From assembly GCA_020536535.1 (NCBI GenBank), contig JAHLWZ010000823.1:44331-108330 (forward strand): a DNA stretch of 64,000 bases. Reading direction: 5' to 3'. The stretch comes from Pelomyxa schiedti (Eukaryota; Protista; Evosea). Both the position numbers and the translations under genes were made by a program. Each line of letters opens with the position of its first letter. The stretch's first letter is position 1. Shown here piece after piece: positions 54,511-59,066 of this stretch. The notes under the pieces are model-generated. The model worked only from the letters and a program-made list of their open reading frames with translations. It made no database searches and had not been told where the DNA came from.

Positions 54511-57500
54511 TCATGTTCTTGATGTAACATTGGCCTTATACTTCAAGAATCTGTTGAGGTTGATTCTTGCCTCGTCACAGTGCCCAAAAACAACAGGATC
54601 CAGGTGTTTCTTTTCCATTGCCAGCTTTTTTGTTTTGAGAAGAAGGTTTGTTTTGTGTTTGTTGTACCTTTCTGTGCCAGATTGGGACAAAAGTGGCCAG
54701 TTGAGTGTACATTCCTAGTCTTTTGGCTACATCTTCATGGTCTTCTTCAGCAAAAATATCAAACAAGCTGTTCAGAGTTTCAGATACAACTTCACAGGGC
54801 GTTCCAGGCTTTACAGTTGTCTTGAGAAGAATTTCAGCAAAACCCTATTGGTGGTTAGTGGAGGAACAGAAAGCAAAGGTGTACAAAAAGTAGAGGGGCA
54901 TTGGCAGGAATGCGGGCAATGATCCCAATCATCGAAGCGCAGCTGGTAGCCACTTCAGAGGGAGACTCAGAGTTTTCGAGATGCTTCATTATTAGAGTTG
55001 GTTGGGGGATCTATGGAAAAGGTTACTGGACAGAAGTGAGAACGAGAAGACACACAAATGGTGGTGTTGGCAGAGTAGAACCAATGCATGTCCTAACTAA
55101 TGTAGCCATGCAACACGTTACTGCGTCAAGGAGTTCGTTGTCTTTAGAAAACTTCAATTTGGTAAGTTGAGGGTTCTGGTTGTTCGAAAGGGGCACACAA
55201 GTCTAGTTGCTTGAGCTTCTGTTGAAGCAAGAGATTCCCACAGAGCTTGAGACTGCGCCACATAATCTTAAAAGGGGTCAGACACCAACAAATTTCCTGA
55301 ATAGCACACAAGGTGATGGTAACGATATTAGCAAGTTAGTGAGACATGCTGCCGCACGTAATTGTAATTTTCTGACTCCCGTGATGTGAACGGCGATAAC
55401 TGGTGCTAGGTCGCGAATTGCTTCAATCATTTCATAGGGAACAGCAATTTTGGAGGCGATCTCAAGCAATGTTGGCATTGGAGTACACAAGGTTTTATAA
55501 GAGCATACTTTGGGTAAAACCCCTAATTTCACCAGCAAAATGAAAATCGGCGATACTTCTCGCCTGGAAATTACTTCATCAGCCATAGGTTCGTCATCTG
55601 AATATTACTGAGAATGAAAAAAAAAGTGTGAGACCAACCGTCATTGTAAGTTGGAGGATTTGAGGGCGTTTGAGTATCAGAACACATGTTGGTGAGAATT
55701 TCTAAGCAAGTTTGTTGAGCATTAAGGTAGCTGCACCATTCACGCAGCACATCAGGGCATCTCATTTGAACGGGATTTGGTTCATCCACGTCAACAACTT
55801 CCTGATGGTACAATAAGTGAATTTTTGAATGGGGGAAATGAATGAATTACTGATAAGATGTCAACAGACTGTTTGTGAACGAGTTCTAGGGCAGCCGGCG
55901 CATCATAATTTAGGAGTTCAACAAGAGACACAACTAGTTCCTCCGAGTTAACTGTCTGGGCCGCAGATAGAAGCATGCCTGATCAGGAATGAGGATATTG
56001 AACTATATCTGCCGCGGGAATACCCAATACAAGCGACTTCAAGTGGGGTGTGATGGATGGAAAGTGTAAGAACTCTTTGAGGGCAACACACTGAGGCTGT
56101 TGGAGCTGTGCAACGGCAGAAGAGTTATCATCACAGAGTGTGAAAATGAATTGGGCTAGTTTCCCAAGGCCACAGTGAATCACCAGAATTAGGTAAAATA
56201 ATAGGAACCTGTAACTGCAGCAGCCTCAATTCCGCACTTTGGAAGCAATGTGAGTAAAGGGGCAACAACTCCGGCTTCCGTAAATTTTGTGGTTGCCTCT
56301 TCGGAAACTTCACTATTTTTGTTTAGTGAGGCGAAGCAAGATGCTTTTCTACATACCATAAATGCGTTGCAAGTAAAATTGTGTTCGCGAGAAGGAGTAC
56401 TGTCTCACATTCTGGGAAGATATCTGTACTCGTCAACGCGAGAGTCCCTTCTGCCTGTTTAGTACCAAGGAGTTACTCTATGTGAGAACTCACAGGCACA
56501 TGTATACTTGCATGATATTCAACAAAACAGGAACTATGCCACATTTAATGATTCCTGGTATCTGCTCTTCAACAGCGATGCATACGTTTCTGGAGGCATT
56601 TAGGAACAAATGAGAAAAGGGCAGCGTTGTGCCTGAGAGCTCCTACAGCAGATATTTTCACAGAGCGTTCAGTTTCACCTTTCAAGAGATTAAACAGTTG
56701 GCCCGCAATACCCCTTGCCAACAACTCCTTTGTCACATTTGCTTGGCTAAGAGGAGGACCGGATTTCGGCTCGGGCTTGTTGCAGGGGGCTGCAGAACTA
56801 ATACTTGGAAGTAATGTGCTAGTGATCTCTTCAATACTACCAGTAACATCACTCCCAATGCAAACTTCATAATTGGAGGTATCCACATCACATGGCTTAT
56901 CCTTGTCATCCCCAGAGTTTTGTGGTGATGGCATTGCAGGGGCTGCGGCTGTGGCTGCTGATGCAACGTTGCTTAGCGTTGAAGGAGCTGTCAATCCTTG
57001 CTGAGTGTCTGTTTGTACCGGAGCAGTTGAGGGAACAGTTTCAGAGGATGAAGGTGCCGGAGTTGAGGTGGAAGCTTTGCTGTCTTGCTGAGGCAATGGT
57101 GGGAAGAACATGGGGACTGCTGTGTCTGGAGTTGGAACAGATGCAAAAGCAGAAGCTATAACGTGGCAAGCACACTCCCTATCTTTCTTCGTAGTACTGT
57201 GCAACTTTTTTTTTTGTTATTGTTTTTGTTTTATTTATTTTTTGAGACAACCCACATTAGACACGCATTGTACTCTATAAAGAGCAACAACAAGCACAGA
57301 ATAGAAATAGCAAAAGCAAAAGCAAAAGCAAAAGCAAAAGCAAAAGCAAAAGCAAAAGCAAAAAACGTACAAGGGTGATAGTCCTTTCAATATCAGACAG
57401 CTTGACAGCATCGACCGAAAAAATAGAACCGCTTTTCTGGCCCCTTGCACCCCGCGTTTGCTGCTTCATATCTCCCTTTGGTGCCACCGGGGCCTTCTTA

Positions 57501-57835
57501 TTCCCCTTCCCCTTCCCCTTGGGCTTCTTCTGCATGGCAGTATCCATCGCTTCGGCCATCACCTTTTGCGCCTGCACCACCGGGTTCATGTCCAACGCTT
57601 GCAGTGCTGGTGCAGAGGAAGAGGAAGAGGAAGAGGAAGAGGCCGAAGAGGTGGCCGTAGTAGTCGTAGTCGCCACAGTGGTAGCAATGGGCGACGACGA
57701 GGGGAAAGTCGCAGGGGCTGCGGTGTTGACAGAGCCAGGCTGTGGGGAGGGCGTGACTGAGACGTTGAGGCGAGGTGGCGCCCTTTTGGCAGGTCGTTTC
57801 TTGCCGCCTTTGGTGTGGACTTTGGCCTTTCCCAT
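54511..57835 (-). CDS. HEATR3: HEAT repeat-containing protein 3 / Syo1 (symportin)
   Basis: Basic MGK N-terminus; 'RECACHVIAS', 'ISAVGALR', 'QQTCLEILTNMCS', 'MFDIFAE' and 'EARINLNRFLKYK'. TGA at 54511-54513. Confidence 0.85.
57310..57363. repeat. (GCAAAA)9 hexanucleotide microsatellite in HEATR3 intron 1
   Basis: Perfect tandem array read directly. Confidence 0.95.
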
Positions 57836-58011
57836 CGGTACCACGCACACGGCCACAACGAGAGACGAGGGGGGCCTGGCTAGAGGAGCGAGAAAAAGAT
57901 TGGGGTTTAAATTTCGGGCCAATTTCGCAGTTGATTCTGGATCTGATGCGGCGAAAGTCTAAACAAGTAAGGGGAACTGCGGGAGGAGTTCTTCACGGAC
58001 AGAACAGGACC

Positions 58012-58017
58012 AAAAAA
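58012..58017 (-). terminator. Putative Pol III terminator (T6)
   Basis: Six T on the minus strand, 3 nt after the 3' strand of the stem that closes the tRNA-like domain. Confidence 0.5.
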
Positions 58018-58061
58018 CTAAGGGAGGGTGAGTGGATTGCAGCCACGCCACAATTGCAGGT

Positions 58062-58152
58062 GACATCCGATTTCAGGTCGGACCCTTTAACCACTCGGGC
58101 AACCACAGCAAGCTGCAGTGGAGGATTCGAACCTCCGAGTCGCAATGAGACA
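58062..58152 (-). tRNA. Circularly permuted tRNA-Ser(UGA)-like sequence (3' half precedes 5' half)
   Basis: Order on the minus strand: T arm GGAGG-TTCGAAT-CCTCC (58136-58120), acceptor 3' strand ACTGCAG, CTTG loop, acceptor 5' strand CTGTGGT, TG, D arm CCCGAGTGGTTAAAGGG, anticodon arm TCCGA-CCTGAAA-TCGGA. Confidence 0.75.
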
Positions 58153-58332
58153 CGTCGAATGCTCTTTGATATGTCCCGGGCAGTGTCGCTCACAATATGA
58201 GAGCACCTTCTCCCTGGAAACCGCCTGAACGTTCGCCCTCTTTTCGCTTCTGTGCAATGGCTGAGACTACATTGTGGGTTTCACCCAAGCCACAAAACAG
58301 GGGAGTGTGGGAAATCCCGCTTGTTAGCTGGC

Positions 58333-58632
58333 GGTCGTGGCTGGGTTGCATGACTGGTGCTGTGGAGCAAGAAGTTTTCCTCGGCCGGTGGAGTTGGGGT
58401 ACAAGAGGGGAACGTCATGGGAATTACGACAGCCTACTACCTTCATCCCTGGCAGCACCGCGGACCCAATCCGCAGGGACACCAATAGGCACCTCAACTA
58501 CGCCGAGGCACGGCTTCGTCTGTTCTGAACAGAAATCTGAAGGAGAAAACATTTTGATGAGAGCGCCACAGCCATGCAACCACGGCCATCCTTAGGAAAC
58601 CCCTAGGGGTTGCGTTGGCCGAAGCAACCTCT
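58333..58632 (+). ncRNA. Candidate structured ncRNA (about 300 nt), family unknown
   Basis: At least eight nested helices, plus a 3' hairpin (58605-58632) followed by a T-rich run. G-U pairs favour the + strand. Confidence 0.55.
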
Positions 58633-58724
58633 TTCTTTAGCTTCTCTTTTCATTTGTCCTCACAGTCAGGACTGGCAGATGGTTTTCCGATAAAAAGTGG
58701 GTTGTCAAGAACAATCGTTGTTGT

Positions 58725-59066
58725 CTAAACGTCAAAATGGCGGCGAGTACCGCAACATGTTCATCAACGTCGGCAAGCAGTGGGGTCACGACACTTAGCA
58801 GATCTGCTGAACTGAGATCATTTGTGCAGTTCATCAACGACCCCGNNNNNNNNNNNNNNNNNNNNNNNNNNNNNNNNNNNNNNNNNNNNNNNNNNNNNNN
58901 NNNNNNNNNNNNNNNNNNNNNNNNNNNNNNNNNNNNNNNNNNNNNCTAAACGTCAAAATGGCGGCGAGTACCGCAACATGTTCATCAACGTCGGCAAGCA
59001 GTGGGGTCACGACACTTAGCAGATCTGCTGAACTGAGATCATTTGTGCAGTTCATCAACGACCCCG
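58725..59066. other. 100-N scaffold gap flanked by an identical 121-bp duplication (probable assembly overlap)
   Basis: 58725-58845 is identical to 58946-59066; N run at 58846-58945. Confidence 0.9.

What the first reader, a model, noticed from the sequence alone, without database searches (positions are those of the whole stretch)
58012..58215. Circularly permuted tRNA-Ser(UGA)-like module inside a larger closed RNA fold ending at a T6 run
Seen, minus strand: a canonical T arm with perfect B box (GGTTCGAATCC; arm at 58136-58120) lies upstream of the D arm (58099-58083) and the anticodon arm (stems 58082-58078 and 58070-58066; TGA at 58075-58073). The acceptor strands ACTGCAG (58119-58113) and CTGTGGT (58108-58102) form 7 bp with two G-U pairs. 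They are covalently joined by CTTG, a G-C-closed CUUG tetraloop. The chain opens at the variable arm instead: GAC/GTC pair, then a 4-nt bulge, ATTGC/GCAAT and further wobble pairs. A 10-bp stem with a 2-nt bulge (AGGGAG-AA-GGTG at 58215-58204 with CACCCTCCCT at 58030-58021) closes the roughly 200-nt unit just before TTTTTT. Established: permuted tRNA genes are known from Cyanidioschyzon, some green algae and nucleomorphs, and Thermofilum, and bacterial YrlA Y RNAs carry a permuted tRNA mimic with a closed acceptor stem. I know of no amoebozoan case and none opened at the variable arm. Inference: this is either a permuted tRNA gene matured through a circular intermediate, or a non-aminoacylated tRNA-mimic ncRNA. 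C33 instead of U33, a non-G discriminator and the very stable tetraloop favour the mimic.
Basis: partly seen in the sequence, partly recalled or inferred. Interest (0 to 1): 0.93.

Follow-up and report, generated by a model that had tools for sequence, protein, structure and literature searches.

The report
Expressed back-to-front tRNA-like gene in amoeba
An amoeba genome (apparently Pelomyxa schiedti) carries a transcribed gene of about 200 bases whose core is a serine-tRNA shape written back half first, with its usual ends sealed into a loop. It belongs to a small conserved gene family, and such a layout, opened in the variable arm, has not been reported before.

Summary
Native sequence gives no tRNA or Rfam hit, but the rejoined halves are called tRNA-Ser(UGA).

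This is not chance or an assembly error:
- A covariance model finds at least 7 such loci in the 52 Mb genome.
- The 74%-identical paralog keeps 96% of the pairs, with 6 pairs changed on both sides, while DNA outside the unit is no more alike than shuffled sequence.
- Two single-cell RNA libraries hold the RNA. A template-switch oligo is joined at 58215/58214, the first base of the closing stem, and one contig runs unbroken through T arm, CTTG linker and D arm.
- A U6-type upstream element (ACCCACAA, -64 to -57) and a T6 run flank the unit.

Ordinary tRNA-Ser(UGA) genes exist in at least 5 places, so this gene is not needed for decoding. There is no bulge-helix-bulge motif at the junction. The discriminator is not conserved, and the anticodon loop drifts (C33 here, CUA in the sister copy). 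Leader and trailer are conserved.

My best reading (about 0.5) is a stable tRNA-shaped noncoding RNA. A true permuted pre-tRNA (about 0.3) is not excluded.

The scan had already noted permuted tRNA genes elsewhere in this genome, including two members of this family.

The parts
58272..58279 (-). Upstream promoter-like element ACCCACAA, at -64 to -57 from the observed RNA 5' end. It matches the Dictyostelium DUSE / U6-type element.
   Evidence: The same NCCCAYAA word lies at -67 to -57 of paralogs C817, C874 and C68. It lies at -67/-66 of all 6 U6 loci examined and upstream of 0 of 28 ordinary tRNA genes. DUSE about 60 nt upstream of ncRNA genes is described in PMC7919456.
58236..58245 (-). A-rich box GAAAAGAGGG at -30 to -21, a possible TATA-like element.
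   Evidence: Read. Comparable GAAAAAGG / GGAAAAGG words lie at about -30 in C817, C967 and C1289 and in U6 upstream regions. This is inference only.
58012..58215 (-). The whole transcription unit of about 204 nt: leader, permuted tRNA-like core, trailer and T run.
   Evidence: RNA 5' end at 58215/58214 in two libraries. Paralog similarity is confined to this span, z = 9.7 inside against -0.3 and 1.8 outside. The 3' end at the T run is inferred, not observed.
58204..58215 (-). 5' strand of the closing stem, AGGGAG-AA-GGTG.
   Evidence: GGTG/CACC is kept in win, C817 and C874 and partly in C68. The outer part varies but stays complementary: GAGA/TCTC in C817, GGGG/CCCC in C874.
58147..58177 (-). 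Leader hairpin GGGACAU...GUGUCUC with the conserved loop word UCAAAGAGCA.
   Evidence: C817 keeps it as GGGUCAC...GUGGCCC. The loop word is identical in both copies.
58142..58146 (-). ATTGC, which pairs with GCAAT at 58053-58057. This helix extends the variable arm.
   Evidence: Invariant in win and C817 (helix 1). It is not recognisable in C874 or C68.
58139..58141 (-). Variable-arm base, 3' strand GAC, followed by U47 and C48 (58138-58137).
   Evidence: GAC/GTC becomes GUU/AAC in C817, two pairs changed on both sides. C874 has UGC/GCA and C68 has AGC/GCU.
58120..58136 (-). T arm with a consensus B box (GGTTCGAATCC).
   Evidence: It is 17/17 identical to C817. The T stem covaries in C874 and C68.
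58113..58119 (-). Acceptor 3' strand ACTGCAG.
   Evidence: All seven family members have different but complementary acceptor strands.
58109..58112 (-). Linker CTTG that seals the acceptor stem as a G(CUUG)C tetraloop. The first base would be discriminator C73.
   Evidence: It is 0/4 conserved against C817. Family linkers are 4 to 12 nt. The RNA contig runs through it.
58102..58108 (-). Acceptor 5' strand CTGTGGT, giving a C1-G72 pair.
58083..58101 (-). U8, G9, D arm (CCC / GAGTGGTTAA / AGG, with a C12.A23 mismatch) and G26.
   Evidence: It is 18/19 identical to C817. The D-loop 13-mer occurs only 4 times in the genome, each time downstream of a B box.
58066..58082 (-). Anticodon arm TCCGA-CCUGAAA-UCGGA, with anticodon UGA at 58075-58073 and C33 at 58076.
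   Evidence: The stem keeps pairing in C817 through two pairs changed on both sides. The loop is only 3/7 conserved and reads CUA in C817.
58053..58065 (-). U44, variable-arm base 5' strand GTC, bulge ACCT, and GCAAT.
58021..58052 (-). Trailer, including the 3' strand of the closing stem CACCCTCCCT (58030-58021).
   Evidence: The trailer is 15/22 and the closing strand 7/10 identical to C817. The homologous trailer word UGUGGC..UGCAAU..CACCC also occurs in C967 and C1289.
58012..58017 (-). T6 run, read as a Pol III-type terminator.
   Evidence: Every family member ends in a run of 5 or more T. Its function is inferred.

Best explanation
The locus is a real, independently transcribed small-RNA gene on the minus strand.

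How it is made:
- A U6/DUSE-type upstream element at -64 to -57 sets the start at 58215. This start is shown by RNA.
- A T6 run ends the transcript at about 58012. This end is inferred.

How the ~200-nt RNA folds:
- It forms a class-II (serine-type) tRNA L-shape encoded in circularly permuted order.
- The acceptor stem is sealed by a 4-nt loop, so there is no end to aminoacylate.
- The chain instead enters and leaves through the variable arm. Leader and trailer pair there into a long irregular rod, closed by a 10-bp terminal stem next to the U tail.

It is one of at least 7 paralogous units in this genome.

For this copy and its sister copy on C817, I think the functional product is most likely the tRNA-shaped RNA itself. 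It would be a stable Pol III noncoding RNA that presents a tRNA elbow, D/T core and anticodon stem to tRNA-binding factors. It would not be a decoding tRNA-Ser. Which factor it binds is unknown.
For: Anatomy. The rejoined sequence is called tRNA-Ser(tga).

Family.

Selection on structure:
- 96% of cells are paired, against 30-50% for slid controls.
- 5 pairs, plus pair 1-72, changed on both sides between the window copy and C817.
- 14 of 26 pairs are compensatory across 4 members.
- All seven acceptor stems differ in sequence but stay complementary.

Neutral sites are saturated. Identity outside the unit equals the shuffled baseline. Yet ungapped identity is 69% in the leader and 68% in the trailer, the T arm is 17/17 and the D arm 18/19. 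The anticodon loop is 3/7 and the linker 0/4.

The anticodon loop is aberrant in both sister copies: C33 here, and CUA with G37 and a C.A mismatch in C817.

The discriminator is C, A, U and G in the four variable-arm-type members. Ordinary tRNA-Ser has G73 and ordinary tRNA-Leu has A73.

Ordinary tRNA-Ser(UGA), tRNA-Ser(GCU) and tRNA-Leu(CAG) genes are present in several copies.

RNA:
- Contigs in two single-cell libraries end at 58215 and 58214.
- Each is followed by the reverse complement of the SMART template-switch oligo.
- One contig is continuous from the leader through the linker into the D arm.
- Flanking DNA has no RNA contig.
- The library type is consistent with poly(A)-tailed SmartSeq2 of P. 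schiedti cells.

Promoter.

No 3-4-3 bulge-helix-bulge motif can be drawn at the junction. There is only one 4-nt bulge on the trailer strand.
Against: Two more distant members keep textbook anticodon loops that match their bodies. C874 has CUGCUAA, and its anticodon stem is nearly that of the ordinary tRNA-Ser(GCU). C68 has UUCAGGU with Leu-type D and T loops. This suggests the family is, or recently was, under tRNA-like constraint.

Short intervening sequences (1-5 nt), an upstream promoter and a T stretch are also features of accepted permuted tRNA genes (PMC3978253).

C33 occurs in some functional initiator tRNAs (my own knowledge).

The RNA data are contigs from a few molecules. They cannot show absence of a circular or mature form, the 3' end, or abundance.

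No partner protein is identified. The genome's TROVE protein lies on another contig and shows no sequence match to solved Ro60 structures. Rfam Y_RNA does not match.
Confidence: 0.5

Rival explanations
1. It is a genuine circularly permuted pre-tRNA-Ser(UGA). Leader and trailer would be removed at the variable arm and the ends ligated. Alternatively the two pieces would stay paired, as in two-piece tmRNA. RNase P and tRNase Z would open the acceptor loop, CCA would be added, and a minor serine isodecoder would result.
For: - The rejoined sequence is a recognisable tRNA-Ser(UGA) with all tertiary-contact bases present: U8, A14, G15-C48, G18G19, G26, T54-Psi55-C56 and A58.
- Stems are maintained by compensatory change.
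- Family members carry Ser(UGA), Ser(GCU) and Leu(CAG) anticodons on bodies of matching type.
- Cutting at the 4-nt bulge would leave a normal 13-nt variable arm, U-GUC-ACCU-GAC-UC.
- Known permuted genes share the external promoter, T stretch and short linkers, and class II tRNAs are over-represented among them.
- Earlier scan notes report other permuted tRNA genes in this genome, one said to be cut at tRNA position 1. This is a lead that I did not test.
Against: - No bulge-helix-bulge or related motif lies at the junction, and no junction structure is shared by the four variable-arm-type members beyond the 3-bp base.
- It has C73 where ordinary Ser has G73, a C1-G72 pair, and C33.
- The sister copy would be an amber suppressor.
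- It is redundant with at least 5 ordinary gene copies.
- Leader and trailer are conserved in sequence far beyond what a discarded flank needs.
- The only RNA seen is uncut at position 1, and no back-joint was found. That is weak evidence because only contigs were available.
Confidence: 0.3
2. It is a decaying but still transcribed copy of a once-functional permuted tRNA gene, with no present function.
For: - U33 has become C33, there is a C12.A23 mismatch in the D stem, and the discriminator is non-canonical.
- The sister copy has a nonsense anticodon and a C.A mismatch.
- Three family members lack a canonical anticodon arm.
- It is redundant with ordinary genes.
Against: - Neutral flanks are saturated, yet T arm, D arm, leader and trailer are conserved. 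Six pairs were repaired on both sides since the window/C817 split.
- The promoter element, closing stem and terminator are intact.
- The RNA is present in two libraries.
Confidence: 0.15
3. It is an assembly or amplification artefact, for example a collapsed head-to-tail tandem of ordinary tRNA genes or a chimera from whole-genome amplification.
For: - A second assembly contig (C3693) starts at 58107.
- One DNA contig of run X4 departs from the window at 58115. Both breakpoints lie in the acceptor hairpin.
Against: - An RNA contig from an independent library spans 58084-58215 without a mismatch, and a DNA contig of run X3 spans the whole stretch.
- No 5' tRNA half lies upstream of the T arm.
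- Six further loci have the same order.
- C3693 is a near-identical allelic contig.
Confidence: 0.02

Closest known systems
Circularly permuted tRNA genes of Cyanidioschyzon merolae, prasinophyte green algae, the Bigelowiella nucleomorph and Thermofilum pendens (review PMC3978253)
   Same: The 3' half lies upstream of the 5' half on one strand. A short intervening sequence joins the acceptor strands. B box and A box are in inverted order. There is an upstream promoter and a downstream T stretch. Class II (Ser/Leu) tRNAs are favoured.
   Different: - The junction is in the variable arm. Reported junctions are 20/21, 37/38, 50/51 and 59/60.
- There is no bulge-helix-bulge motif.
- Long conserved leader and trailer form a rod with a terminal stem.
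- The discriminator is not conserved.
- It is redundant with ordinary genes.
- The host is an amoebozoan, not an alga or archaeon.
- No circular intermediate or mature product has been shown.
Bacterial YrlA-type Y RNAs (tRNA mimics bound by Ro60/Rsr)
   Same: A noncoding RNA whose 5' and 3' ends pair in a stem. It carries a tRNA-like domain with T arm, D arm and an acceptor-like stem that cannot be charged.
   Different: - Here the ends leave through the variable arm, and a full anticodon arm is kept.
- No Ro-binding helix sequence is recognisable, and Rfam Y_RNA does not match.
- It is not linked to a Ro60 gene.
- It is eukaryotic, with a Pol III-type terminator.

The comparison with YrlA anatomy rests on my recollection of the literature, not on a test here.
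DUSE-driven small noncoding RNA genes of Dictyostelium (snRNAs, Class I RNAs; PMC7919456)
   Same: An upstream element with three consecutive C lies about 60 nt before the start. The 5' and 3' ends pair in a short terminal stem. A T run lies downstream. Both hosts are amoebozoans.
   Different: Class I RNAs are 42-65 nt and have no tRNA-like domain. Here the element is shared with this genome's U6 genes and drives a ~200-nt tRNA-shaped RNA.
Two-piece tmRNA from circularly permuted ssrA genes
   Same: A permuted gene for a tRNA-like RNA. The precursor could be opened at the acceptor loop, with the pieces left held together by base pairing and no ligation.
   Different: tmRNA is bacterial or organellar, lacks an anticodon arm and carries a tag reading frame. 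No cleavage at the acceptor loop is seen here.

Membership tests
Circularly permuted tRNA gene | The 3' half (T arm plus acceptor 3' strand) is encoded upstream of the 5' half on the same strand, joined by a short intervening sequence. | tested here: met
   The linker is 4 nt, and the reported range is 1-74 nt.
Circularly permuted tRNA gene | The rejoined sequence forms a canonical cloverleaf with a sense anticodon. | tested here: met
   ARAGORN calls tRNA-Ser(tga) for 362 of 598 joins. The deviations are C33, C1-G72, C73 and C12.A23.
Circularly permuted tRNA gene | A bulge-helix-bulge motif, or a relaxed form of it, where leader and trailer meet. | tested here: not met
   Only one 4-nt bulge lies between a 3-bp and a 5-bp helix, with no opposing bulge. 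No junction motif is shared with C874 or C68.
Circularly permuted tRNA gene | A circular intermediate and a mature CCA-tailed tRNA are produced. | tested here: inconclusive
   No back-joint appears in the contigs of four runs. Contigs cannot show absence, and raw reads were not available.
Circularly permuted tRNA gene | An external upstream promoter and a downstream T stretch. | tested here: met
   ACCCACAA at -64 to -57, shared with U6 genes, and a T6 run.
Functional tRNA-Ser | G73 discriminator and U33, as in this genome's ordinary tRNA-Ser genes. | tested here: not met
   The window copy has C73 and C33. The ordinary genes have G73 and U33.
YrlA / Y RNA | A tRNA-like domain with a non-chargeable acceptor-like stem, inside an RNA closed by a 5'/3' stem. 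| tested here: met
YrlA / Y RNA | A conserved Ro60-binding helix, or a match to the Y_RNA model. | tested here: not met
   No Rfam match, even at E <= 10.
YrlA / Y RNA | A Ro60 partner encoded nearby or present in the genome. | tested here: inconclusive
   A TROVE-domain gene exists on contig C807. One of its three pieces was compared with solved structures and matched no Ro60. It is not linked to this locus.
DUSE-type amoebozoan ncRNA gene | A CCC-containing upstream element about 60 nt before the transcription start. | tested here: met
tRNA-derived SINE | A box before B box, an A-rich or repeat tail, target-site duplications and many copies. | tested here: not met
   The box order is inverted, the unit ends in a T run, and there are 7 diverged loci. 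Target-site duplications were not looked for.

The most novel reading that the evidence does not exclude
The family may be a previously unknown class of eukaryotic tRNA-shaped noncoding RNAs. These would be Pol III transcripts from a U6/DUSE-type promoter in which a complete class-II tRNA fold has a sealed acceptor stem and a long leader-trailer rod growing out of the variable arm.

Two functional readings fit:
- The RNA acts as such, as a decoy or scaffold for tRNA-binding enzymes. That would be a eukaryotic counterpart of bacterial YrlA.
- It is opened only at the acceptor loop, giving a two-piece, rod-bearing tRNA without any ligation step.
Probability: 0.4. Interest if true: 0.85.

Novelty: new variant of a known kind. 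Interest (0 to 1): 0.78.

Why it matters
Permuted tRNA genes have been reported only from a few algae, a nucleomorph and one archaeon. In those cases a bulge-helix-bulge motif explains how the halves are rejoined.

This locus differs in four ways:
- The host is an anaerobic amoeba.
- The break lies in the variable arm.
- The motif is absent.
- The promoter is of snRNA type, and the flanks are conserved and structured.

There are two possible consequences. If the amoeba matures these RNAs, it does so by an unknown pathway. If it does not, it has turned tRNA folds into a new kind of stable noncoding RNA. Either result bears on how disrupted tRNA genes arise and on how widespread tRNA mimicry is in eukaryotes.

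The observed RNA 5' end, the paralog set and the covariance model make the question directly testable in a culturable organism.

Tried and rejected
- **Native tRNA and Rfam scans.** ARAGORN and Rfam (gathering threshold and E <= 10) on the native sequence found nothing relevant. The only hit was a 17-nt chance match to the T hairpin.
- **Whole-unit folding energy.** It is not significant (z = -1.0) and I did not use it as evidence.
- **Trailer-only hairpin.** The hairpin at 58064-58042 in the minimum-energy fold is not kept in C817, so I rejected it.
- **Core alignment of four members.** MAFFT misplaced the linker gaps (A4), so I did not use that alignment. I built the model from the two-sequence alignment A5 instead.
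- **5' leader motif search.** GGTGCTCNNATATTG gave no further members. One-mismatch hits showed no B box in the 26 loci fetched, apart from a lone B-box-like word in L074 that I judged chance. A recurrent GGTGCTCATATTTTG word belongs to an unrelated dispersed repeat.
- **Y RNA idea.** A TROVE gene is present, but it has no Ro60-like PDB match, is not linked, and there is no Y_RNA hit. The idea is unsupported.
- **Metagenome pattern scan.**
  - It returned 13 non-tandem permuted class-II loci.
  - Seven of the 13 look like the known 37/38 junction type of green algae (my inference from the sequences).
  - None has window-type flanks; the seven unexplained loci checked (six of the 13 plus L143) also lack a DUSE-like element.
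  - Cross-species conservation therefore remains untested.
- **RNA contig 3' limits.**
  - The contigs stop one base before G26 (58083) and one base before A58 (58127).
  - I considered this a trace of m2,2G26 and m1A58.
  - I set it aside because in tagmented low-input libraries contig ends may simply be transposase cut sites.
- **No RNA contigs on 58012-58083.** This says nothing about the 3' end.
- **First read-laying run.** It failed because of the N gap at 58846-58945.

Full report
**Observation.**
- T arm GGAGG-TTCGAAT-CCTCC, 58136-58120.
- Acceptor 3' strand ACTGCAG, 58119-58113.
- Linker CTTG.
- Acceptor 5' strand CTGTGGT, 58108-58102, giving 7 bp with two G-U pairs.
- U8 and G9, a serine-type D arm, and G26.
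- Anticodon arm TCCGA-CCUGAAA-UCGGA, with C33 and anticodon UGA at 58075-58073.
- Variable-arm base GTC/GAC, split between trailer and leader.
- A 4-nt bulge, then GCAAT/ATTGC.
- A 10-bp terminal stem with a 2-nt bulge (58215-58204 with 58030-58021).
- A T6 run (58017-58012).

ARAGORN and Rfam see nothing in the native order. ARAGORN calls tRNA-Ser(tga) for 362 of 598 in-silico joins of the two halves. The folding energy of the whole unit is unremarkable (z = -1.0), so the case rests on other evidence.

**A conserved gene family.** The window lies in a 52.4 Mb assembly of 5,337 contigs.
- A DNA search finds a 74%-identical paralog on contig C817 and a near-identical allelic contig.
- The serine-type D-loop 13-mer occurs only four times in the genome, each time downstream of a B box.
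- A covariance model of the core (R1) retrieves seven loci.

Four loci are opened in the variable arm:
- the window copy, with anticodon UGA;
- C817, with CUA;
- C874, with the canonical Ser loop CUGCUAA;
- C68, with the canonical Leu loop UUCAGGU and Leu-type D and T loops.

Three loci (C967, C1289, C267) have the variable arm closed by a short loop and are opened in the anticodon arm instead.

All seven share these features:
- the T arm;
- a sealed acceptor stem whose sequence differs in every copy but stays complementary, with linkers of 4-12 nt;
- the D arm, G26 and C48;
- a leader motif;
- a terminal stem built around GGTG/CACC or a variant of it;
- a T run.

**Covariation and conservation.**
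- Between the window copy and C817, 96% of cells are paired, against 30-50% when the partners are slid.
- Five pairs changed on both sides. Pair 1-72 (C-G to A-U) is a sixth, read from the alignment.
- With four members, 14 of 26 consensus pairs show compensatory change.
- Outside the unit the two loci are no more alike than shuffled sequence (z = -0.3 upstream, 1.8 downstream), so neutral sites are saturated.
- Inside the unit the T arm is 17/17 identical and the D arm 18/19. Leader and trailer are 69% and 68% identical without gaps.
- The anticodon loop (3/7) and the linker (0/4) are the least conserved parts.

**Expression and transcript start.** Contigs of two single-cell RNA libraries cover 58084-58215 and 58128-58214. 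They leave the flanks at 57500-58040 and 58220-58845 uncovered.
- Each contig continues past 58215 or 58214 into CCCATGTACTCTGCGTTGATA(CC). This is the reverse complement of the Smart-seq template-switch oligo as I recall its sequence. It marks where reverse transcription reached the RNA 5' end.
- That position is the first base of the terminal stem and the point where paralog conservation begins.
- The longer contig runs without a mismatch from the leader through T arm, acceptor, CTTG and acceptor into the D arm. The permuted order therefore exists in RNA, and at least some molecules are uncut at tRNA position 1.
- The run descriptions fit the published poly(A)-tailed SmartSeq2 transcriptomes of single Pelomyxa schiedti cells (PMC10579272). 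Earlier scan notes also name this species. I did not verify the species independently.
- The data are contigs, so they say nothing on the 3' end, on abundance, or on the absence of rejoined forms. No back-joint was listed.

**Promoter.** The word ACCCACAA lies 64 to 57 nt upstream of the observed start, at 58279-58272.
- The same NCCCAYAA word sits at -67 to -57 in C817, C874 and C68. ACCATAAG sits at that place in C967 and C1289.
- All six U6 snRNA loci examined carry ACCCATAA at -67/-66. None of 28 ordinary tRNA genes has the word within 120 nt upstream.
- This matches the DUSE element described about 60 nt upstream of Dictyostelium noncoding RNA genes (PMC7919456).
- Together with the T6 run, it indicates an externally promoted, Pol III-type small-RNA gene. 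That fits the inverted order of B and A boxes.

**Is it a tRNA gene?** Evidence against a decoding role:
- Ordinary tRNA-Ser(UGA) genes are present in at least five places in tRNA arrays. They have G1, U33 and G73.
- Ordinary Ser(GCU) and Leu(CAG) genes exist too. The permuted copies are therefore not needed to read any codon.
- The window copy has C33, C1-G72, C73 and a C12.A23 mismatch.
- Its sister copy would be an amber suppressor with G37 and a C.A mismatch.
- The first linker base (the would-be discriminator) is C, A, U and G in the four variable-arm-type members.
- No bulge-helix-bulge motif can be drawn at the junction. Beyond the 3-bp base, no junction structure is shared by the four members. 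Accepted permuted tRNA genes have that motif (PMC3978253).
- The conserved, structured leader and trailer go well beyond what discarded flanks need.

Evidence for a tRNA role:
- Short linkers, an external promoter and a T stretch are normal for permuted tRNA genes.
- All tertiary-contact bases are kept.
- C874 and C68 keep textbook anticodon loops that match their bodies.
- Cutting at the 4-nt bulge would give a normal 13-nt variable arm.

**Verdict.** The locus is a real, expressed member of a family of permuted class-II tRNA-like genes. For this copy I rate the readings as follows.

| Reading | Probability |
|---|---|
| Stable tRNA-shaped noncoding RNA | about 0.5 |
| Genuine permuted pre-tRNA, matured by an unknown route or as two pieces | about 0.3 |
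| Decaying but still transcribed copy | about 0.15 |
| Assembly or amplification artefact | about 0.02 |

The Y RNA analogy is only structural. There is no Y_RNA model hit. The TROVE gene is unlinked, and one of its three pieces, compared with solved structures, matched no Ro60.

**Novelty.** The review of permuted tRNA genes lists junctions at 20/21, 37/38, 50/51 and 59/60, and no amoebozoan host. A full-text search found no paper that links permuted tRNA and Pelomyxa. The scan itself had already noted permuted tRNA genes on other DNA of this genome, including first-reader notes on C874 and C68. I treated those notes as leads and re-derived the family independently.

**Relatives in other organisms.** A truncated metagenome scan found other permuted class-II loci but no relative of the window-type unit. 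Conservation in other species is therefore untested.

Noticed in passing
window 58333-58632 (+): A second structured-RNA candidate lies divergently next to the unit. It has a long terminal stem, GTCGTGGCTGGGTTGCATG with CATGCAACCACGGCCA. The fold z-score is -1.85, there is no Rfam match at E <= 10, and no RNA contig covers it in the two RNA libraries. It was already noted by the scan as s1-632138.
   Followed up: partly
window 58846-58945: A run of 100 N, an assembly gap, lies about 630 nt from the unit.
   Followed up: yes
L009 (G000:C237:36069-39106), L019 (C913), L054-L056 (C962): Ordinary tRNA genes sit in dense, repeated arrays (Leu, Tyr with intron, Ser, Lys, Pro, Arg and others). This recalls the tRNA arrays known from Entamoeba (my own knowledge). 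ARAGORN labels the intron-bearing tRNA-Tyr(GTA) as tRNA-???.
   Followed up: no
L210-L215 and 15 further places: U6 snRNA is present in about 20 copies. All six loci examined carry ACCCATAA at -67/-66, so a DUSE-like promoter element appears to be used in this archamoeba.
   Followed up: partly
L033:1442-1623 (+) [C967], L034:1446-1612 (+) [C1289], L004:1454-1623 (-) [C267]: Three family members have the variable arm closed (by a UUCG, a GAAA and a UAU loop) and are opened in the anticodon stem instead. Their 27-30 and 40-43 strands lie in trailer and leader, and no canonical anticodon loop is evident.
   Followed up: partly
L003:1498-1714 (+) [C817]: The sister copy of the window unit carries anticodon CUA, which would read the UAG stop codon, in the loop CUCUAGA.
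   Followed up: partly
L129, L188, L155, L169, L185, L136, L143 (metagenome contigs): These environmental contigs hold class-II tRNA-like loci in permuted order. Their acceptor stems are sealed by 4-11-nt linkers, and their junctions are not at 37/38. Some sit among other tRNA pieces. None has a DUSE-like word, and their organisms are unknown.
   Followed up: partly
G000:C807:26546-27809 (L026-L028): A TROVE-domain gene interrupted by introns. The one piece compared with solved structures matched no Ro60. It may be of the TEP1 or telomerase-p80 kind.
   Followed up: partly
window 58107-58115; L002 (G000:C3693): Two independent contig breaks fall inside the acceptor hairpin. Allelic contig C3693 starts at 58107, and a contig of DNA run X4 leaves the window at 58115. 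These are probably assembly or amplification breakpoints at the hairpin.
   Followed up: partly
L069, L071, L079 (G000:C191, C251, C447): A dispersed repeat shares the word GGTGCTCATATTTTG with the leader motif by chance. It is unrelated to the family.
   Followed up: yes
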